DNA of 62,979 nt, counting the filler, from Octopus bimaculoides (lineage: Eukaryota), in NCBI RefSeq assembly GCF_001194135.2. It is 3 parts of 3 records of this genome, joined end to end, with 100 filler letters (N's around TTAATTAATTAA, not from the genome) between each part and the next. Parts side by side here need not be neighbours in the genome. Positions count along the whole stretch, not along the records: positions 1 to 30,254 come from NC_068983.1; 2 more parts are not named here. One strand, given 5' to 3'. Below the pieces are notes generated by a model. That model saw nothing but the letters and a program-made list of their open reading frames with translations, ran no database searches and was not told where the DNA came from. Shown in pieces: positions 1-30,254 of the stretch. Position numbers and translations under genes: made by a program. Numbering within the stretch: position 1 is the stretch's first letter; each line of letters starts with the position of its first letter.

Positions 1-565
1 AATTAATGTACATTTAAACACAAAAGAGGTGAGCCTTAACAGGTCGCCTCACACACTAGAAGAAACATTATGTATGTATGTATTTATGTTTGTATGTTTG
101 TATGTATGTATGTAAGTATGTGTATATATACATACATATTTATGCGTGCACGTATATGTGCGTGTGTGTGTGTGCGTGCGCGCGCGTGGATGTGGGTGCA
201 TTTATGCATATCATCGCTTCACGCCCATAGCATTTACACAGTCTGAACGAATTTTTCTTCTTCGCCACCCTCAAAGAATTCTCTCATTAATACTACGTGT
301 CTTTCCGGTTTCTCCTCTCCCTCTCCCGACCCTGACACCTTCCTTCTGTCCCCTCATTCCCCTCTTTCCTTTGACCTCACTCTGTACCTCATATTCCTCC
401 CGTCGATCCTGCCATTCCTGCAACTCAAATGTCTGTGTCCTTCCATCTCCCCCCTCTCTCTCTCTCTCTCCCATTTCTCATTTTTTATCCTTCAATCATT
501 ATTTTAACATGGGTAGTCTTACATAAATATATTTTTCACTCACACATTCATTCATCTATCTATAT

Positions 566-1218
566 TCTCTTTTACTCTCTTTTACTTGTTTCAGTCATTT
601 GACTGCGGCCATGCTGGAGCACCGCCTTTAGTCGAGCAAATCGAACCCAGGACTTATTCTTTGGATGCCTAGTACTTATTCTATCGGTCTTTTTTGCCGA
701 ACCACTAAGTTACGGGGACCTAAACACACCACCATCGGTTGTCAAACGATGTTGGGCGGGGGGGAACAGACACAAACAAATACACACACATACACACACA
801 CACACACACATATATATNNNNNNNNNNNNNNNNNNNNNNNNNNNNNNNNNNNNNNNNNNNNNNNNNNNNNNNNNNNNNNNNNNNNNNNNNNNNNNNNNNN
901 NNNNNNNNNNNNNNNNNNNNNNNNNNNNNNNNNNNNNNNNNNNNNNNNNNNNNNNNNNNNNNNNNNNNNNNNNNNNNNNNNNNNNNNNNNNNNNNNNNNN
1001 NNNNNNNNNNNNNNNNNNNATATATATATATATAAACATATATACATATATACGACGGGCTTCTTTCAGTTTCCGTCTACCAAATCTACTCACAAGGCTT
1101 TGGTCGGCCCGAAGCTATAGTAGAAGACACTTGTCCAAGGTGCCACGCAGCAGGATTGAACCTGGAACCATGTGGTTGGTAAGCAAGCTACTTACCACAC
1201 AGCCAATTCTGCGCCTAT
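566..1218 (-). mobile_element. SINE family A copy (tRNA-derived head, internal CA/TA microsatellite, CTTTTA-repeat tail on + strand)
   Basis: The minus strand reads ATAGGCGCAG..TGGCTGTGTGG (A box) ..GGTTCAATCC (B box) then CCTTGGACAAGTGTCTTCTACTATAGC; the same sequence recurs more than 10 times in the window; an N gap lies inside the internal microsatellite. Confidence 0.9.
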
Positions 1219-1807: not shown

Positions 1808-2614
1808 GCATATATTAACGTATATGCATATGGTTACGCATATTTGTGCGTCTGAATCATAATTATGCTGCTTGTATGTGTATACATGAACATATGAATA
1901 TATACACACGCCGTCGTTTATTAATACGTCTACTTCAAAATGATGAATTACGCGGTTGTATTTTTGCTCAAGCATAAATACATACACACATACACACACA
2001 AATACATACACACATACACACACAAATACATGCATACACACACATACATATATAAAGATACANNNNNNNNNNNNNNNNNNNNNNNNNNNNNNNNNNNNNN
2101 NNNNNNNNNNNNNNNNNNNNNNNNNNNNNNNNNNNNNNNNNNNNNNNNNNNNNNNNNNNNNNNNNNNNNNNNNNNNNNNNNNNNNNNNNNNNNNNNNNNN
2201 NNNNNNNNNNNNNNNNNNNNNNNNNNNNNNNNNNNNNNNNNNNNNNNNNNNNNNNNNNNNNNNNNNNNNNNNNNNNNNNNNNNNNNNNNNNNNNNNNNNN
2301 NNNNNNNNNNNNNNNNNNNNNNNNNNNNNNNNNNNNNNNNNNNNNNNNNNNNNNNNNNNNNNNNNNNNNNNNNNNNNNNNNNNNNNNNNNNNNNNNNNNN
2401 NNNNNNNNNNNNNNNNNNNNNNNNNNNNNNNNNNNNNNNNNNNNNNNNNNNNNNNNNNNNNNNNNNNNNNNNNNNNNNNNNNNNNNNNNNNNNNNNNNNN
2501 NNNNNNNNNNNNNNNNNNNNNNNNNNNNNNNNNNNNNNNNNNNATATATAGTATAAATTTTTGGTATGCACAAAAGCAGTTCAAACCGTACTAGGAAGCA
2601 AAAATCGAATTATA

Positions 2615-2830
2615 TTCTTTTCTACTCTAGGCACAAGGCCCGAAATTTTGGTGTCGGGGCCCATTCGGTTAGATTGACTCCAGTACGCAACTGGTACTTA
2701 ATTTATCGACACCGAAAGGATGAAAGGCAAAATTGACCTCGGTGGAATTTGAACTCAGAATGTAAATACAGACGAAATACCACTAAGCATTTCGCCCGGT
2801 GTGCTAACATTTCTATTAGCTCGCCGCCTT
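2615..2830 (-). mobile_element. SINE family B copy
   Basis: Reverse complement of head GGCGGCGAGCT..GTTAGCAC..GAGTTCAAATTCC (B box), body TTTCATCCTTTCGG..TCGATAAATTAAGTACC and tail CCTTGTGCCTAGAGTAGAAAAGAA; many copies in the window. Confidence 0.9.
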
Positions 2831-3954: not shown

Positions 3955-3994
3955 CTATGTATGTATGTATGTATGTATGTATATATGTATATAT

Positions 3995-4543
3995 AAGAAC
4001 GGTATAATGACTACTATGAAGTCACTTGGAATGGATCCAGAAGATATAGAAACCCTTGCTTCGGATCCAGTTGGATGGCGAACAAAGGTGTAAAGTGGAA
4101 TAAAAGCATTTGAAGAGGCCAGGATAATGAAAGTAAGACTCAAAAGAGTTCTAAGGAACAATGTAACGATCGAGAAGGTGAATGACCTTTTTGTGTGCAC
4201 AGTCTGTGACAGACCATGCCTGTCTTTGGCTGGCCTCAAATCTCATCTGCGAACGCACGGAAAACGAACTTCCAACAACTATTCTGACGATATGTATGTG
4301 CACAACTTTGAATGCAGTGTATGCCAGAAGGTTTGCAAATCCAACGGAGGCCTCAAAAGACATGTTAAGATCCACAAATAGCAGAACTTATTTGCAGGTA
4401 TTGGTGGTCCAAATCAGAGGTGCAATCTATGTGGATGCCTTTTCAGAACATTGTCTGGTTTAAAAAGCCACATCAGACGCCATGATGGTGCTAAGTTGTT
4501 GGTACAGGAGGTGGTCAAACACTGTATAAGGAGTAGACAGCCA

Positions 4544-4546
<3 letters not shown>
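3995..4546 (+). pseudogene. 5'-truncated RTE-type LINE ORF C-terminus carrying three C2H2 zinc fingers, with two in-frame stops
   Basis: One frame reads KNGIMTTMKSLGMDPEDIETLASDPVGWRTKV*SGIKAFEEARIMKVRLKR, matching the RTE RT tail pattern (ETLA.DR..WR..V..G...FE..R). It then gives CTVC-X12-HLRTH (4196-4258), CSVC-X12-HVKIH (4313-4375), a TAG at 4379, and CNLC-X12-HIRRH (4421-4483). Flanked by (TATG)n/(TA)n on the left and (TA)n on the right. Confidence 0.8.
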
Positions 4547-4585
<39 letters not shown>

Positions 4586-7745: not shown

Positions 7746-8117
7746 ATAGGAGTGGCTGTGTGGTAAGTAACTTGCTTACCAACCACATGGTTCCGGGTTC
7801 AGTCCCACTGCGTGGCACCACGGGCAAGTGTCTTCTACTATAGCTTCGGGCCGACCAAAGCCTTGTGAGTGAATTTGGTAGACGGAAACTGAAAGAAGCC
7901 TGTCGTATAGATATATATGTATGTATATGTTTGTGTGTCTGTGTTTGTCCTCCCAACATCGCTTGACAACCGATGTTGGTGTGTTTACGTCGCCATAACT
8001 TAATGGTTCGGCAAGAGAGATCGATAGAATAAGGCTTACAAAGAATGAGTCCTGGGGTCGATTTGCTCGACTAAAAGTGGTGCTTCAGCATGGCCGCAGT
8101 CAAATGACTGAAACAAA
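7746..8117 (+). mobile_element. SINE family A copy
   Basis: AGGAGTGGCTGTGTGGTAAG..GGTTCAGTCCC head through the CAGCATGGCCGCAGTCAAATGACTGAAACA tail. Confidence 0.9.
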
Positions 8118-8794: not shown

Positions 8795-9020
8795 CTCTTT
8801 TACTCTTTTCCTCTTTTACTTGTTTCAGTCATTTGACTGTGGCCATGCTGGAGCACAGCCTTTTGTCGAGCAAATCGACCCCAGGACTTATTCTTTGTAA
8901 GCCTAGTACTTATTCCATCGGACAATCTTTTGCCGAACCGCTAAGTTACGGGGACGTAAACACACCAGCATCGGTTGTCAAGCGATGTTGGGGAGACAAA
9001 CACAGATACACAAACATATT

Positions 9021-9054
<34 letters not shown>

Positions 9055-10032
9055 GACACGATTGTGTGTATATGTGTGTGTGTGATGTTTTGTATGTGTG
9101 TGTATATATGTATATATATGTATATATGTATATATATGTATATATGTATATATATGTATATATGCATATATGTGTGTATGTATGTATATATGTGTGTATG
9201 GTGGTTTGTATGTGTATNNNNNNNNNNNNNNNNNNNNNNNNNNNNNNNNNNNNNNNNNNNNNNNNNNNNNNNNNNNNNNNNNNNNNNNNNNNNNNNNNNN
9301 NNNNNNNNNNNNNNNNNNNNNNNNNNNNNNNNNNNNNNNNNNNNNNNNNNNNNNNNNNNNNNNNNNNNNNNNNNNNNNNNNNNNNNNNNNNNNNNNNNNN
9401 NNNNNNNNNNNNNNNNNNNNNNNNNNNNNNNNNNNNNNNNNNNNNNNNNNNNNNNNNNNNNNNNNNNNNNNNNNNNNNNNNNNNNNNNNNNNNNNNNNNN
9501 NNNNNNNNNNNNNNNNNNNNNNNNNNNNNNNNNNNNNNNNNNNNNNNNNNNNNNNNNNNNNNNNNNNNNNNNNNNNNNNNNNNNNNNNNNNNNNNNNNNN
9601 NNNNNNNNNNNNNNNNNNNNNNNNNNNNNNNNNNNNNNNNNNNNNNNNNNNNNNNNNNNNNNNNNNNNNNNNNNNNNNNNNNNNNNNNNNNNNNNNNNNN
9701 NNNNNNNNNNNNNNNNNNNNNNNNNNNNNNNNNNNNNNNNNNNNNNNNNNNNNNNNNNNNNNNNNNNNNNNNNNNNNNNNNNNNNNNNNNNNNNNNNNNN
9801 NNNNNNNNNNNNNNNNNNNNNNNNNNNNNNNNNNNNNNNNNNNNNNNNNNCATATATACATATATACGATGTGCTTCTTTCAGTTTTCGTCTACCAAATC
9901 CACTCACAAGGCTTTGGTCGGCCCGAGGCTATAGTAGAAGACACTTGCCCAAGGTGCCACGCAGTGGGACTGAACACGGAACCATGTGATTCGTAAGCAA
10001 GCTACTTACCACACAGCCGCTCCTACGCCTAT
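8795..10032 (-). mobile_element. SINE family A copy with expanded internal microsatellite and gap
   Basis: Tail half at 8795-9010, head half at 9865-10032, microsatellite and N gap between them. Confidence 0.88.
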
Positions 10033-10466
10033 TCAACGTATTAAATGTCTAGTTCACATTTCATTGTGTGAAGGTGAGCACGCGCACGTGCGTGTGTGTA
10101 TGGTGTGTGTGGTGTGTACACATATATACCGCTTATCTTTTACTTGTTTCAGTCATTAAGTTTCGGCCTTGCTTGTCCGCCACTTTGAAGAATTTTAGTT
10201 AAACAAATCAAGCCCAGTACTTATAGTTTTTTTTAAACCTGGTACTTGTTCTATCGGTCTCTCCTGTTGAACCGTTCAGTTACAAACTCGTAAACACAGC
10301 AACATACGTTATCATATTGGTGGCGGGGGAAATCAAAGCCACAAACTTATTATAGTCTAGAATATGTATACACACACATATATAGATATATAGTTACATA
10401 TCCTTGGATCTTACATTTATATATGCATATTATAGTAAACGTATATATATCACCATGATTGATCGC

Positions 10467-12135: not shown

Positions 12136-12290
12136 TTCCAATGTGTATCATTCATTGATATTTCTTACACATTTGCATCTGATACTATAGTTTCAAAAAG
12201 AATAAAATGTTTATTATTGCAATTGAATAGAAAAGGATAAATATGCTTTTTTTCAGCGATCCCCATTTGGGACTTTTCGAACGATCATAT

Positions 12291-12675
12291 AGGCGCAGGA
12301 GTGACTGTGTGGTAAGTAGCTTGCTTACCAACCACATGGTTCCATGTTCAATCCCCCTGCGTGGCACTTTGAGCAAGTGTTTTCTACTATAGTCTCGAGC
12401 CGACCAAAGCCTTGTGAGTGGAATTGGTAGACGGAAACTGAAAGAAGCCCGTCGTGTATGTATCTGTGTGTGTTTGTACCCTCCCAACATCGTTTGACAA
12501 TTGATGTTGGTGCATTTACGTCCACGTAACTTATCGGTTCGGCAAAAGAGAATCCGATAGAATAAGTACTAGGATTACAAAGAATAACTCCTGGGGGCGA
12601 TTTGCTCAACTAAAGGCGGTGCTCCAGCATGGTCGCAGTCAATTGACCGAAACAAATAAAAGAGTAAAAAAGAGT
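12291..12675 (+). mobile_element. SINE family A copy
   Basis: AGGCGCAGGAGTGACTGTGTGGTAAG head to GACCGAAACAAATAAAAGAGTAAAA tail. Confidence 0.9.
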
Positions 12676-12928: not shown

Positions 12929-13535
12929 AAGGCGGCGTGTTGACAGAATCGTTAGCACGCTGTGCGAAATGCTTAGCGGTATTTCGTCTGCTGTTACGTT
13001 TGCCTTTCATCCTTTCGGGGTCGATAAATTAAGTACCAATTATGCACTGGGGTCGATATAATCGACTTAGTCCCTTTGTCTGTCCTTTTTTGTCCCCTTT
13101 ATGTTTAGCTCCTTGTAGGAAATAAATAAATATGAATCGTTAGCATGCCGGGCGAAATGCTTAGCGGTATTTCGTCTGCTGTTACGTTCTGAGTTCAAAT
13201 TCCGCCGAGGTCGACTTTGCTTTTCATCCTTTCGTGGTCAATAAATTAAGTACCAGTTACTCACTAGGGTCGATGCAATCGACTTTATCCCTTTGTCTGT
13301 CCTTGTTTGTCCTCTCTATGTTTAGCCACTTGTGGGCAATAAAGAAATATGAATCGTTACCACGCCGGGCGAAATGCTTGGCGGCATATCGTCTGACTGC
13401 AAATTTAGGGTTCAAATTCTGCCGAGGTCGACTTTGTTTTTCGACCCCAGTAGAACACTGGGGTCGATATAATTGACTAGCACCCTCCCCCGAAATTCCG
13501 GGCCTTGTGCCAAAGTTTGAAGCCAATATTATTAA
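12929..13535 (+). mobile_element. Head-to-tail trimer of SINE family B
   Basis: Three bodies; the second and third start at GAATCGTTA directly after an AAATAT tail (13128-13140, 13345-13358). Confidence 0.88.
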
Positions 13536-15911: not shown

Positions 15912-16277
15912 TTCTTTTACTCTTTTATTCTTTCATTCTTTTACTTGTTTCAGTCATTTGGCAGCGGTCATGCTGGAGCATCGCCTTTAGTCGAGCAAAT
16001 CGACCCCAGGACTTGTTCGGTGTAAGCCTAGTTGTCGGGCGATGTTGAGAGGATAAACACCGACACACAAACACATACACACACACACACACATGCATAT
16101 ACGTATATACGGCGGGCTTCTTTCAGTTTCCGTCATCCAATTCCACTCACAACGCTCTGGTCGGCCCGAGGCTATAGTAGAAGACACTTGCCTAAGTTAC
16201 CACGCAGTAGGACTGAACCCGGAACTAGGTGGTTAGTAAGCCAGCTATTTATCACACAGCCACTCCTGCGCCTATAT
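15912..16277 (-). mobile_element. SINE family A copy
   Basis: TCTTTTACTTGTTTCAGTCATTTG..CACAGCCACTCCTGCGCCTAT on the + strand. Confidence 0.9.
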
Positions 16278-18101: not shown

Positions 18102-18802
18102 CCTAAGGCGACGAGCTGGCAGTATTGTTAACACGCCGGGCGAAATGCTTAGCGGTATTTNNNNNNNNNNTGTTAACACGCCGGGCGAAATGCTTAGCGG
18201 TATTTCGTCTGCCGTTACGTTCTGAGTTCAAATTCCGCCGAGGTTGACTTTGCCTTTCATCCCTTCGGGATCGATAGATTAAGTACCAGTTACGCACTGG
18301 GGTAGATGTAATCGACTTAATCCATTTGTCTGTCATTGTTAGTCCCTTCTACGTTTAGCCCCTTGAGGGCAATAAAGAAATATGAATTTTCAGCACGTCA
18401 GGCGAAATGCTTAGCGGTATTTCGTCTGTCTTTATGTTCCGAGTTCAAATTCCGCCGAGGTCGACTTTACTTTTTATCCTTTCGGGGTCGATAAATTAAG
18501 TACCAGTTGCGTATTGAGGTCGATTTAATCGACTGGCACCCTCCCATAAAATTGCGTGCCTTGTGCCTAGAGTAAAAAGGAGTATAAAGGCGGCGAGCTA
18601 GCAGAATCGTTAGCACACCGGGCGAAATGCTTAGCGGTATTTCGTCTGTCTTTACGTTCTGAGTTCAAATTCCGCCAAGGTCAACTTTGCTTTTCATCCT
18701 TTCGGGGTCAATAAATTAAGTACCAGTTGTGTACTGGATCGATCTAATTGACTGGTCCCCTCTCCCAAAATTTCGGGCCTTGTTCCTAGAGTAGAAAAAA
18801 AA
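18102..18802 (+). mobile_element. Young SINE B cluster (3 bodies) flanked by the 13-bp direct repeat AGATCTTCCCACA
   Basis: Bodies start at about 18107, 18389 and 18588; the direct repeat is at 18088-18100 and 18803-18815. Confidence 0.85.
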
Positions 18803-18829
18803 AGATCTTCCCACACCCTCCAACTCTTA

Positions 18830-19725
18830 GACGATGAGCTGGAAAAACCTTAGCGTGCCGGACAAAATGATTAGTGGTATTTCGTTCGTTCTGACATTTT
18901 GAGTTCAAATTCCGACCAGGCCGACTTTACGTTTCATCCTTTCAGGGTCGATAAAAATATTTACCAGTTAAAAACTGGGGACGATGTAATCGATATTAAC
19001 CTTCCCTCAAAAACTGCTGCCCCTATGCCAAAATGTGAAACCAGCATTCGATCTCCCGAAGAAGACGGGTTGGCCGAACCGTTAGCACGCTGGGAAAAAT
19101 GCTTAGTGGCATTTCGCCCGTCTTCATGTTCTGAGTTCAAATTCCACCGGGGTCAACTTTACCTTTCATCCTTTCGGGGTGGATGAAATAAGTACCAGTT
19201 GAGCAATGGCGTTGATTTACATCGACTGGTCCCTCTCTCCCCCAAATTTCAGGCTTTGTGCCTATAGTAGAAAGGATTATTAGATCTCGCAAAGACGGTG
19301 AGCTGGCTGAACCGTTAACACGCCGGACAAAATGCCACTCAGCATTTTGTCCGTCTTTTTATGTTCTGAGGTCAAATTTCGCAGGGGTCAAGTTTACCTT
19401 TCATCCTTTCGGGATCGATAAATTAGGTGTCATTCGAGTACTGGGATCAATGTGATTGACCAACCCTCCTCCCACCCAAATTCCAGGCCTTGTGCCTATA
19501 GTTGAAAGAAATTTTAGACCTTCCAAAATGGTGACAATCTGGCAGAATCGTTAGCATACCGGACAAAATGCTTAGCAGAATTTCATCCGATTTTGCTTTC
19601 TGAGTTCAAATTCTGCCTAGGTCACTTTTGCCTTTCGTCCTTTCGGGATCGATAAAATAAGTACCAGTTGGACTCTGGGGCCGATGTAATCGATTTCCCC
19701 TTCCCTCAAATACTGCTGGCTTTGA
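18830..19725 (+). repeat. Tandem array of four diverged SINE B units, period about 230-234 bp
   Basis: Heads at about 18830, 19064, 19294 and 19528, each preceded by a GATCT(C/T)CC-like linker. Confidence 0.8.
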
Positions 19726-19795: not shown

Positions 19796-20065
19796 TTTAT
19801 TCTACTTGTATTATTACAATCGTTGCTGCTGATTGGCTCAATTTTTTAAAGTTCACTTCACAACCATGTACTCGTGCTTCGTACTTTTTTGTTGTACATA
19901 TTTCATGAGGTCCTGTGCCCACATATGCACATATATACGTATAGATATCTGTACATATACGTATGTATATATGCATATATATATATATTATTCATATTAT
20001 ATCGCGCGCGCGCACACACACACACACACACATACACACACACGCACACACACACACCTATATAT

Positions 20066-20522
20066 ATAGGCGCAGGCGCGGCTGTGTGGCAAGAAGCTTG
20101 CTTCCCAACCACATGATTTCAGGTTCCTTCCCAGTACTTGGCACCTTGGGCAAGTGTCTCCTGTTGTAGCCTCGAGCCGATCAGATCCTTGTGAGGGGAT
20201 TTGGTAGAAAGAAACTGAAAGAAACCCGTCGTGTATATGTGTGTGTATATATATGTATCTATGTGTGCCTGTTTGCATGTGTGTGTTGTGTGTGTGCGCG
20301 CGCGCGTCTGTGTCTGTCTTTAGCGACCACCACCGCTTGACAAATGGTGGTGGTGAGTTTACCTCCTGTAACTTAGAGGTTCGGCAAAAGGACCCAATAG
20401 TATTAATACTAAGCTTCAAAAAATAATAAGTCCTAGAGTTGATTTGTTCGACTAAAACCCCTTCAAGGCGGTGCCCCAGCATGGCCGCAGTCAAATGACT
20501 GAAACAAGTAAAAGAATAAAAT
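20066..20522 (+). mobile_element. SINE family A copy
   Basis: AGGCGCAGGCGCGGCTGTGTGG head to GACTGAAACAAGTAAAAGAATAAA tail. Confidence 0.9.
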
Positions 20523-29484: not shown

Positions 29485-29979
29485 TTACAGATTGTCCTAT
29501 ATTTTATATATATGTGTATATATTAGCTAAAAGTTTATTTTATTCTGGCACTAGTTCTAAATATATAAACGAATCACTTAATGGCACCACCAAAATATTC
29601 CATAGTACCTACAAGCGTGTATCCCGCATATGTTTCGCATTAACAAACTTAATGCAATGTCAAACTGACAACGGATACAGAAAAGAAGACTTTGAAAATA
29701 CAACTATATATATATACACAGGATAAATCACGTGTGGGTGGGTGTGTGGGCATATCTGTTTGTATCTAAGCTTGTGTGTGTACATGTTTGTGGATGTAGT
29801 GCTTGTGTGTTAATGTGTATATACGTATGTGTCTGAGGGCTTCTGTGTATATGTGTATATGAGCTTATGCATGCGTGTGAGTATTTGGGAGGGGAGTGTA
29901 TGTTTGCATGTGCATGTGTGTGTGTGTGCATCTGCATGGGTGCGACTGGTTATGTGTATCTGTATATGCATATATACAT

Positions 29980-30254
29980 TCTTTTATTCTTTTATTTGTT
30001 TCAGTCATTTGACTGCGTCCATGCTGGAGCACCACCTTTAGTGGAGCAAATCGATCCCAGAAATTATTCTTTGTAAGCCTAGTAATTATTATATCGGTCT
30101 CTTTTGCCAAACCGCTAGCTTACAGGGATGCAAACACACCAGCATCTGTAGTCAAGCGATGTTGCCGAGGACAAACACAGACACACAAACATACACACAA
30201 ACACATACACACACATACATAAATATATGTACTGTACATATATATATATATATA
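29980..30254 (-). mobile_element. SINE A tail half ending at a scaffold join
   Basis: TCTTTTATTCTTTTATTTGTTTCAGTCATTTGACTGCG..GGACAAACACAGACACAC. Confidence 0.85.

What the first reader, a model, noticed from the sequence alone, without database searches (positions are those of the whole stretch)
3995..4546. RTE-type LINE end encoding three tandem C2H2 zinc fingers
Seen: one frame joins an RTE-like RT tail to three perfect C-X2-C-X12-H-X3-H fingers; the third lies past a TAG and is missed by the ORF track. All three share a GLKxH helix with Gly at position +3, and the linkers are 15-18 aa rather than TGEKP. Established: some RTE-type LINEs end in a single C2H2 finger, and coleoid cephalopods have expanded C2H2 gene families. 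Inference: the finger was multiplied inside the retroelement, so this LINE may spread multi-finger cassettes and could feed host ZNF genes. Gly at +3 suggests RNA or non-specific binding rather than base reading.
Basis: partly seen in the sequence, partly recalled or inferred. Interest (0 to 1): 0.8.

Follow-up and report, generated by a model that had tools for sequence, protein, structure and literature searches.

The report
Dead RTE LINE tail, three fingers
This is the broken, 5'-truncated tail end of an RTE-type jumping gene in an octopus genome, and its three zinc fingers are the normal, ancient ending of that whole element lineage in many animals, not an octopus invention or a source of host genes.

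Summary
One frame of window 3995-4546 reads a reverse-transcriptase tail, a basic helix and three perfect C-X2-C-X12-H-X3-H fingers. The linkers are 18 and 15 aa, and Gly-Leu sits at helix positions +3/+4.

The piece is a dead, 552-bp, 5'-truncated 3' end of an RTE-clade LINE. It keeps the element's own 3' hairpin and (TA)n tail.

Full-length relatives are single ORFs of 1030-1180 aa with AP endonuclease, RT and C2H2 fingers. Of the 120 relatives found with the RT-plus-tail query, 53 end in exactly these three fingers; others have one, two or four. Each finger resembles the same-position finger of other elements (53-58% identity) more than its own neighbours (37-43%). The array is therefore old and conserved, not multiplied in octopus.

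An exhaustive search found no host poly-finger protein built from these fingers.

An octopus RTE carrying a C2H2 domain is already published (RTE-2_OV).

The likely function is RNA or single-strand binding that replaces the missing ORF1. This is inferred by analogy with L1Tc C2 and is untested.

Interest is low to moderate.

The parts
3956..3994 (.). (TATG)n followed by TA-rich simple sequence abutting the 5' truncation point. This is flank, not element.
   Evidence: Sequence read. Similarity to the O. vulgaris copy L001 begins at window 3994.
3995..4090 (+). Remnant of the RT C-terminal tail (KNGIMTTMKSLGMDPEDIETLASDPVGWRTKV). The element is 5'-truncated here.
   Evidence: Aligns with the ...RFKD...DRxxWRxxV tail of full-length APE+RT proteins. 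L001 continues upstream into an RVT domain.
4091..4093 (+). In-frame TAA, an inactivating mutation.
   Evidence: The O. vulgaris copy has Trp here; other relatives have Arg, His or Lys.
4094..4195 (+). Conserved helix and basic stretch (SGIKAFEEARIMKVRLKRVLR...) plus the spacer before finger 1.
   Evidence: FE..R....LKRA.RK is conserved across 34 tails: R18 invariant, E7/R10/K17/R21/K22 at 90% or more. AlphaFold2 helix 2-21 has pLDDT about 92.
4196..4258 (+). C2H2 finger 1 (CTVCDRPCLSLAGLKSHLRTH).
4259..4312 (+). 18-aa linker with the conserved NY motif.
4313..4375 (+). C2H2 finger 2 (CSVCQKVCKSNGGLKRHVKIH), carrying the family-wide signature C..C.KvCKSagGLKRH.
   Evidence: C74/C77/C81/G86/L87/H90 are invariant in 34 tails.
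4379..4381 (+). In-frame TAG, an inactivating mutation at a position that is Asp, Asn, Glu or Gly in relatives.
4421..4483 (+). C2H2 finger 3 (CNLCGCLFRTLSGLKSHIRRH).
   Evidence: Nearly identical in pattern to finger 3 of P0005 (CSLCGFVSRTLAGLKSHIRAH).
4507..4547 (+). 3'-terminal hairpin (GGTGGT...GCCACC) followed by CAT, the conserved 3' end of the element. The reading frame stays open through it.
   Evidence: MFE -11.3 kcal/mol, z -2.2. The same GGTC-hairpin-GAC-A(R)CCAYCAT end occurs in relatives L003, L007, L008, L011 and L012.
4546..4584 (+). (AT)n simple-repeat tail, the 3' end of the insertion.
   Evidence: Relatives end in (AT)n or (ATGT)n directly after the same motif. This is an RTE hallmark (PMC2887409).

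Best explanation
Window 3995-4584 is a dead, 5'-truncated copy (about 590 bp) of an RTE-clade non-LTR retrotransposon in an octopod genome. It was made when target-primed reverse transcription started at the element's 3' end and stopped early, so only the last ~180 codons, the 3' hairpin and the (TA)n tail were inserted. It has since picked up two stop codons.

The intact element encodes one ORF of about 1100-1180 aa: AP endonuclease, then reverse transcriptase, then a basic helix, then three widely spaced C2H2 fingers. There is no ORF1. That three-finger ending is inherited and is shared by many relatives in other animals.

Inferred mechanism (not shown): in the active element the basic helix and the three flexible, non-TGEKP fingers bind single-stranded nucleic acid. 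The ligand would be the element's own RNA, possibly its conserved 3' hairpin and simple-repeat end, and/or the nicked target strand. This would supply the RNA-binding and chaperone function that ORF1p provides in other LINEs, as the two C2H2 motifs of L1Tc C2 do. I put this functional part at about 0.5. The copy in the window does nothing.
For: Identity:
- The O. vulgaris homologue P0001 (E 8.5e-38) sits at the end of a decayed RVT-bearing LINE copy.
- A query made of that RT plus the window tail finds 1857 proteins. The top full-length ones are 1030-1180 aa with PF03372 + PF00078 + zf-C2H2 at 97% query coverage.
- They lie on contigs of about 4-5 kb as the only large ORF.
- 53 homologues carry exactly three fingers at +46, +85 and +122 aa from the DRxxWR motif, with positional orthology.

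Clade:
- RT domains of the octopus copy and of the 1-, 2-, 3- and 4-finger relatives score 114-168 bits against RTE(-BovB-type)-labelled references.
- They score 92-119 bits against RTE-X and 41-83 bits against Nimb, L1-Tx1, L2, CR1, Proto2 and Hero (labels from PMC10294476).

3' end:
- The 3' UTRs are very short and end in a hairpin plus CAYCAT plus (AT)n or (ATGT)n, both in relatives and in the window.
- This matches published RTE hallmarks (PMC2887409).
- It also matches the published octopus RTE-2_OV: 1109 aa, EN+RT+C2H2, with the ORF ending at a microsatellite (PMC9115989).

Function:
- There is no ORF1 in relatives.
- A conserved basic helix precedes the fingers.
- AlphaFold2 gives three confident independent fingers joined by low-confidence linkers, pTM 0.39.
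- The C2H2 motifs of L1Tc C2, flanked by basic stretches, bind ssRNA preferentially and act as a nucleic acid chaperone (PMC2805920).
Against: - The RTE assignment rests on a 15-sequence labelled panel and BLASTP scores, not a full phylogeny. Ingi/Vingi, Jockey, R1 and RTETP references were not in the panel.
- Identity to RTE-labelled references is only 30-37%, so this is a deep branch.
- Most relatives come from unnamed aquatic metagenome contigs, so the host range is inferred only from octopus, cestodes and one fish-like contig.
- No target-site duplication could be defined, because both junctions lie in TA-rich simple sequence.
- The functional model is analogy only.
- The same 3' hairpin occurs in 1-, 2- and 3-finger elements, so finger number does not track it.
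- Foldseek finds only generic DNA-bound C2H2 arrays, none at E <= 0.001.
Confidence: 0.85

Rival explanations
1. The fingers were multiplied recently inside the octopus element. The LINE then spreads multi-finger cassettes that seed host C2H2 genes.
For: 1-, 2-, 3- and 4-finger versions exist in the clade, so finger number has changed by internal duplication at some time. Short three-finger ORF fragments are scattered in genomes.
Against: Same-position fingers of elements only 42-53% identical overall are more alike (53-58%) than different fingers of one element (37-43%), so the array predates their divergence. Among the best 150 of 4608 hits in 1.84 billion representatives, the poly-ZNF proteins have 7-aa linkers, TGEKP, almost no Gly-Leu at +3/+4 and few Cys at the Phe position. 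All signature-bearing hits are 120-285-aa LINE-tail fragments. The window copy has two stops.
Confidence: 0.04
2. It is an exon or pseudogene of an ordinary host C2H2 zinc-finger gene that only happens to lie next to LINE debris.
For: Pfam sees only zf-C2H2 families in the fragment. Cephalopods have many ZNF genes.
Against: The fingers are contiguous, in frame and collinear with the RT tail. The same arrangement is found in hundreds of APE+RT proteins. The piece ends with the element's own hairpin and simple-repeat tail. No gene with this product is on record.
Confidence: 0.02
3. It is the same element, but the fingers read double-stranded target DNA and steer insertion into TA- or ATGT-type microsatellites, instead of binding RNA.
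For: The window copy is flanked 5' by (TATG)n and TA-rich sequence and ends in (TA)n. Relatives end in (AT)n or (ATGT)n. The N-terminal C2H2 fingers of R2 bind target DNA (my own knowledge). The Foldseek neighbours are DNA-bound arrays.
Against: The 15-18-aa linkers and Gly at +3 are unlike base-reading arrays. RTE insertion sites are reported as not sequence-specific, with the repeats generated by the element itself (PMC2887409). Tails differ between close relatives while the fingers stay conserved.
Confidence: 0.15
4. The element belongs to another APE-type LINE clade with C-terminal C2H2 motifs (for example Ingi/Vingi), not to RTE.
For: L1Tc (Ingi clade) carries C2H2 motifs at its C-terminus (PMC2805920). 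The panel had no Ingi/Vingi reference. A bivalve RTE-BovB consensus has no C-terminal fingers.
Against: All nine queries hit the three RTE-labelled RT domains best, by 20-60 bits over RTE-X and by about 50 bits or more over the I-group member (Nimb), L1, L2 and CR1. No RNase H was detected. The element has the short simple-repeat 3' UTR and single ORF typical of RTE. The published octopus element with the same architecture falls in RTE by phylogeny (PMC9115989).
Confidence: 0.06

Closest known systems
RTE-2_OV, the RTE-clade LINE of Octopus vulgaris (Petrosino et al. 2022, PMC9115989)
   Same: Octopus host. Single ORF of about 1100 aa with endonuclease, RT and a C2H2 zinc-finger domain. The ORF runs up to a microsatellite that makes up the 3' UTR. 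Placed in RTE by phylogeny.
   Different: Its sequence is not public (stated in PMC13282606), so identity could not be tested. The paper reports 'a C2H2 zinc finger', not three fingers and not their conservation. The window holds only a decayed 3' fragment.
Classical RTE / BovB-type elements (C. elegans RTE-1, lepidopteran RTEs in PMC2887409, bivalve S.grandis_45 RTE-BovB in PMC10294476)
   Same: Single ORF with APE + RT, no ORF1 and no RNase H. Very short 3' UTR made of simple repeats. Frequent 3'-only truncated copies. The RT domain is the best match.
   Different: Their ORF (about 990 aa in the lepidopteran elements) ends with the RT tail. The bivalve RTE-BovB consensus has no C-terminal finger and instead carries an internal Cys-rich insert. 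The present lineage adds a basic helix plus 1-4 C2H2 fingers.
C2-L1Tc, the C-terminal C2H2 region of the Trypanosoma cruzi LINE L1Tc (PMC2805920)
   Same: C2H2 motifs at the C-terminal end of a LINE protein, flanked by basic stretches. Shown to prefer single-stranded RNA and to act as a nucleic acid chaperone. This is the best functional model for the tail.
   Different: Different clade (Ingi, with RNase H). Two fingers, not three. No detectable sequence relationship was tested here. The function is transferred by analogy only.
Host tandem C2H2 arrays (KRAB-ZNF / CTCF type)
   Same: The same beta-beta-alpha zinc-finger fold and Pfam family.
   Different: Host arrays have 7-aa TGEKP linkers and variable residues at -1, +2, +3 and +6. 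Here the linkers are 15-18 aa, Gly-Leu is fixed at +3/+4, Cys usually replaces the core Phe, and the array is attached to an RT.

Membership tests
RTE-clade non-LTR retrotransposon | Single ORF encoding AP (EEP) endonuclease + RT, with no ORF1 and no RNase H | tested here: met
   Met in full-length relatives: PF03372/PF14529 + PF00078, and the only large ORF on 4-5 kb contigs. The window copy itself is 5'-truncated, so only its last ~180 codons can be seen.
RTE-clade non-LTR retrotransposon | RT domain groups with RTE references | tested here: met
   BLASTP against 15 RT domains labelled in PMC10294476: RTE(-BovB type) 114-168 bits, RTE-X 92-119, all other clades 41-83, for the octopus copy and eight relatives. 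This is a nearest-reference test, not a phylogeny, and Ingi/Vingi were absent from the panel.
RTE-clade non-LTR retrotransposon | Extremely short 3' UTR ending in simple-sequence repeats | tested here: met
   In the window the frame runs into (AT)n at 4546-4584. Relatives have 20-80 nt UTRs followed by (AT)n or (ATGT)n. The criterion is from PMC2887409.
RTE-clade non-LTR retrotransposon | Target-site duplication flanking the insertion | tested here: inconclusive
   Both junctions lie in TA-rich simple sequence (TATATATA | element | (AT)n), so a duplication cannot be told apart from the tail.
RTE-2_OV (published octopus element) | Sequence identity to the published element | not testable with these tools
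   The sequence is not released (PMC13282606) and was not found in the held supplements. Architecture and the microsatellite at the ORF end agree.
C2H2 zinc finger (Pfam PF00096) | C-X2-4-C-X12-H-X3-5-H spacing and a score above the gathering threshold | tested here: met
   Three exact C-X2-C-X12-H-X3-H units; 45.9 bits against 25.2.
C2H2 zinc finger (Pfam PF00096) | Beta-beta-alpha fold | tested here: met
   AlphaFold2 with 34 tails: each finger has two strands plus a helix, pLDDT above 90. This is a prediction only.
Tandem base-reading C2H2 array (host ZNF type) | Fingers joined by conserved ~7-aa TGEKP-type linkers | tested here: not met
   Linkers are 18 and 15 aa with low pLDDT. Host poly-ZNF hits have a median linker of 7.
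Functional host gene | Open reading frame | tested here: not met
   There are two in-frame stops (4091, 4379) and no start context. No gene with the 84-aa ORF product is on record.
LINE C-terminal C2H2 nucleic-acid chaperone (L1Tc C2 type) | C2H2 motifs at the protein's C-terminus flanked by basic stretches | tested here: met
   The basic helix ...RIMKVRLKRVLR... precedes finger 1, and LKRA.RK is conserved in the family.
LINE C-terminal C2H2 nucleic-acid chaperone (L1Tc C2 type) | Preferential ssRNA binding and chaperone activity | not testable with these tools
   This needs biochemistry. It is known only for L1Tc (PMC2805920).

The most novel reading that the evidence does not exclude
The basic helix plus three spaced Gly-Leu-type C2H2 fingers could be the ORF1 substitute of a pan-metazoan RTE sublineage. 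In this reading it specifically recognises the clade-wide conserved 3' end (GGTC-hairpin-GAC-A(R)CCAYCAT plus simple repeat). It would then be the template-recognition module of a 'stringent' LINE, with finger number (1, 2, 3, 4 or more) evolving by internal duplication to tune that recognition.
Probability: 0.2. Interest if true: 0.5.

Novelty: new member of a known kind. Interest (0 to 1): 0.25.

Why it matters
For the window itself it matters little. This is one more decayed RTE 3' fragment in a repeat-rich octopus region, useful mainly for repeat annotation and as a warning that such fragments produce spurious small 'zinc-finger' ORFs and 'hypothetical proteins'.

The wider point is that a large RTE sublineage, found in octopus, cestodes and many unnamed aquatic animals, ends in a conserved helix plus three C2H2 fingers and shares a conserved 3' hairpin. 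I did not find this spelled out in the papers I could search. It gives a concrete, testable candidate for how ORF1-less RTE elements bind their RNA.

It also bears on claims about an active RTE in the octopus brain, because it identifies which protein module to mutate.

Tried and rejected
- Other copies in the window: blastn and tblastn of the fragment against the 30-kb window found none.
- Searching the 5.8-billion-protein set with the fragment alone gave only 3 hits because of the word prefilter. A chimeric query (O. vulgaris RT plus window tail) was needed.
- The 84-aa window ORF is not on record as a gene.
- Organism names for the relatives: cluster members carry none.
- The RTE-2_OV sequence is not in the held supplements.
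- The exhaustive phmmer search with the tail was dominated by host poly-ZNF proteins that score by summing many weak finger matches. It was useful only after sorting hits by finger signature.
- RNAalifold on MAFFT-aligned 3' ends recovered only the 3-bp GUC/GAC stem, because the inner stems differ in length. Single-sequence folds were used instead. The two one-finger elements' hairpins are not better than shuffles (z -0.2 and -0.6).
- A link between finger number and the 3' hairpin was rejected: 1-, 2- and 3-finger elements share the motif.
- Foldseek against the PDB returned only generic C2H2 arrays, none at E <= 0.001.
- tRNA and Rfam scans of the window found nothing.
- Several literature searches for a described multi-finger RTE tail found only Petrosino 2022.
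- I did not build a full-length consensus of the element; it was not needed for the verdict.

Full report
**1. What is in the sequence**

Window 3995-4546 (+), read in one frame, gives the features below.

| Feature | Residues or coordinates |
|---|---|
| RT-tail peptide | KNGIMTTMKSLGMDPEDIETLASDPVGWRTKV |
| In-frame TAA | 4091-4093 |
| Helix and basic stretch | SGIKAFEEARIMKVRLKRVLR... |
| Finger 1 | CTVCDRPCLSLAGLKSHLRTH, 4196-4258 |
| Linker | 18 aa |
| Finger 2 | CSVCQKVCKSNGGLKRHVKIH, 4313-4375 |
| In-frame TAG | 4379-4381 |
| Linker (including the stop) | 15 aa |
| Finger 3 | CNLCGCLFRTLSGLKSHIRRH, 4421-4483 |

- After finger 3, about 20 further codons run into an (AT)n tract at 4546-4584.
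- All three fingers have exact C-X2-C-X12-H-X3-H spacing, with Gly at helix position +3 and Leu at +4.
- Pfam zf-C2H2 matches three stretches (E 5.4e-12, 45.9 bits against a cut-off of 25.2).
- The fragment starts directly after a (TATG)n and TA-rich tract.
- It occurs only once in the 30-kb window.

**2. It is the 3' end of a LINE**

- The closest database protein is an O. vulgaris 'hypothetical protein', P0001 (E 8.5e-38, 73% identity).
- At its locus (L001, chromosome OX597817.1) the same frame continues upstream, through frameshifts and stops, into a recognisable reverse transcriptase with the YADD motif.
- Nucleotide similarity between the window and L001 is 84% and begins at window 3994. 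The window copy is therefore truncated at its 5' end there.
- A second hit, P0002, comes from an unrelated eukaryotic contig that also carries a Tc1-like transposase. It has an RVT_1 ORF, the same tail and two finger-like units.

**3. The three-finger ending is the family norm**

- A query made of the O. vulgaris RT plus the window tail found 1857 proteins.
- The best full-length ones are 1030-1180 aa, carry PF03372/PF14529 (AP endonuclease), PF00078 (RT) and zf-C2H2, and cover 97% of the query, through finger 3.
- Of the 120 homologues listed from that search, 53 have exactly three C2H2 units at about +46, +85 and +122 residues after the DRxxWR motif.
- Others have two units or one. Two cestode proteins (Sparganum, Spirometra) have four.
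- One-finger members stop right after finger 1.

Each finger position has its own signature:

| Finger | Signature |
|---|---|
| F1 | C..C.R.cLSKAG..SH |
| F2 | C..C.KvCKSagGLKRHm.vHk |
| F3 | C.iC...CkSlAGLKSHLRAH |

- Between elements, same-position fingers are 53.5%, 53% and 58.5% identical.
- Different positions are 35-44% identical between elements and 37-43% identical within one element.
- The array therefore predates the divergence of elements that are now only 42-53% identical overall. It is not a recent or octopus-specific multiplication.
- The window's TAG lies where relatives have Asp, Asn, Glu or Gly, and the TAA lies where the O. vulgaris copy has Trp. Both are decay mutations.

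**4. Clade**

The relatives sit as the only large ORF on contigs of about 4-5 kb, with no ORF1.

I took RT domains labelled in Martelossi et al. 2023 (PMC10294476, Data S2 and Table S7, plus the consensus LINE_S.grandis_45#LINE/RTE-BovB). I then ran BLASTP with the octopus RT and eight relatives carrying 1, 2, 3 or 4 fingers.

| Reference group | Bit score |
|---|---|
| RTE (BovB type) | 114-168 |
| RTE-X | 92-119 |
| Nimb, L1-Tx1, L2, CR1, Proto2, Hero | 41-83 |

- Together with the 3' end described below, this supports RTE membership.
- The test is not a full phylogeny, and no Ingi/Vingi references were in the panel.
- The bivalve RTE-BovB consensus has no C-terminal finger and instead has an internal Cys-rich insert. 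C2H2 tails therefore mark a sublineage, not all of RTE.

**5. The 3' end**

- In full-length relatives the stop codon is followed by only 20-80 nt.
- These end in GGTC-hairpin-GAC-A(R)CCAYCAT and then (AT)n or (ATGT)n.
- The window has the same ending: GGTGGTC...GACAGCCACCAT(AT)n at 4507-4584.
- The inner stems differ completely in sequence between elements but still pair: ACUCG/CGAGU, UCUUCU/AGAAGA, CAUCUG/CAGAUG.
- Single-sequence folds give z -1.8 to -3.1 for five ends with the tool's dinucleotide-preserving shuffles. With mononucleotide shuffles the range for the three-finger and two-finger ends reaches -4.1.
- The two one-finger ends are not significant.
- Short 3' UTRs made of simple repeats are the published hallmark of RTE elements, which also leave many 3'-only fragments (PMC2887409).
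- The published octopus element RTE-2_OV is 1109 aa with EN, RT and a C2H2 zinc finger 'relatively rare in RTE elements'. [quoted passage not shown] Its sequence is not public (PMC13282606).

**6. Does the cassette feed host ZNF genes?**

- I ran phmmer with the 136-aa tail against 1.84 billion representatives. It gave 4608 hits at E <= 0.001.
- The best 150 fall into two classes.
  - **Long poly-ZNF proteins.** These have 10-100 fingers, a median linker of 7 aa and TGEKP. They almost never have Gly-Leu at +3/+4. They score by summing many weak matches.
  - **Short proteins of 120-285 aa.** These have three fingers (sometimes two or four), the Gly-Leu and extra-Cys signature, and 14-24-aa linkers. 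They begin inside the RT tail, so they are LINE fragments like the one in the window.
- No host-type protein built from these fingers was seen.
- The idea is not excluded, but it has no support.

**7. Likely function of the tail in the active element (inferred)**

- AlphaFold2 with 34 tails gives a confident N-terminal helix and three confident beta-beta-alpha fingers. They are joined by low-confidence linkers, with pTM 0.39, so the picture is of independent modules on a string.
- Foldseek finds only generic C2H2 arrays.
- The element has no ORF1.
- A conserved basic stretch (LKRA.RK) precedes the fingers.
- Gly-Leu is fixed where base-reading fingers vary.
- The nearest tested case is L1Tc C2. 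Its two C2H2 motifs, flanked by basic stretches at the end of a LINE protein, bind ssRNA preferentially and act as a nucleic acid chaperone (PMC2805920).
- I therefore favour RNA or single-strand binding and chaperoning that replaces ORF1p, at about 0.5.
- Specific recognition of the conserved 3' hairpin is a more interesting subset of that model, at about 0.2.
- dsDNA targeting of microsatellites is the main functional rival, at about 0.15.

**8. Verdict**

The RTE tail and the third finger's membership of the ORF are right. The claim of novel multiplication and the host-gene-seeding idea are not supported.
- The object is a dead fragment of a known kind of element, and an octopus RTE with a C2H2 domain is already published.
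- The incremental points are the conserved three-finger architecture with positional orthology, and the clade-wide 3' hairpin.

Noticed in passing
window 4507-4584; L003 4180-4215, L006/L007/L008 just after the stop codon, L011, L012, L013: A conserved 3' terminus is shared by 1-, 2- and 3-finger RTE relatives that are only about 45-50% identical in protein. It reads GGTC-hairpin-GAC-A(R)CCAYCAT followed by (AT)n, (ATGT)n, (CAA)n or (CAT)n. The inner stems differ in sequence but stay paired. It looks like a 'stringent-type' template-recognition end.
   Followed up: partly
window 4208, 4325 (Cys at the fourth residue after the second zinc Cys); alignment A2: The canonical hydrophobic Phe/Tyr of the finger core is replaced by a third Cys (C-X2-C-X3-C). 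This Cys is invariant in finger 2 across 34 tails and common in fingers 1 and 3. In the window's finger 3 it has reverted to Phe. The meaning is unknown; it could be a spare zinc ligand or simply a core residue.
   Followed up: no
window 561-754 + 1040-1220; 8795-8988 + 9854-10034; 15920-16277; 29971-30164: A dispersed element of about 380 bp, SINE-like, has an internal (CA)n(TA)n microsatellite. In two copies the microsatellite coincides with assembly gaps (N runs at 818-1019 and 9218-9850). Inverted copies lie at 7748-7948, 12287-12478 and 20056-20284.
   Followed up: no
window 12947-13462 and 18168-19724: Tandem arrays of units of about 217-235 bp, 70-93% alike. They are partly related (82%, inverted) to the SINE-like sequence at 2610-2813, so this may be a SINE-derived satellite.
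   Followed up: no
L001 10454 onwards (O. vulgaris OX597817.1): Similarity between the O. vulgaris copy of the LINE and the window stops inside finger 2. What follows translates to a peptide resembling the one read from the SINE-like repeat at window 2566-2736. The rest of that LINE copy is not within the next 10 kb.
   Followed up: partly
PMC10294476 supplementary LINE library, LINE_S.grandis_45#LINE/RTE-BovB: This bivalve RTE-BovB consensus has no C-terminal C2H2. It carries a Cys-rich, PHD-like insert (YPCAVCRGGVGSNSIQCSECRLWVHKKCSN...CPRCCG) between the RT palm and the tail. RTE lineages therefore seem to have acquired zinc modules at different places.
   Followed up: no
P0011, P0357 (database hits): Animal LINE proteins of this family are deposited as 'MAG: ... 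[Nitrosomonadaceae bacterium]' and '[Anaerolineales bacterium]'. This is eukaryotic contamination binned into bacterial metagenome-assembled genomes.
   Followed up: no
P0331, P0279-P0285, P0322-P0327 (cluster members): Identical full-length 1055-1186-aa ORFs recur on many separate metagenome contigs (one of them on 22). The three-finger elements therefore look intact and multi-copy, hence probably active, in unnamed aquatic animals.
   Followed up: no
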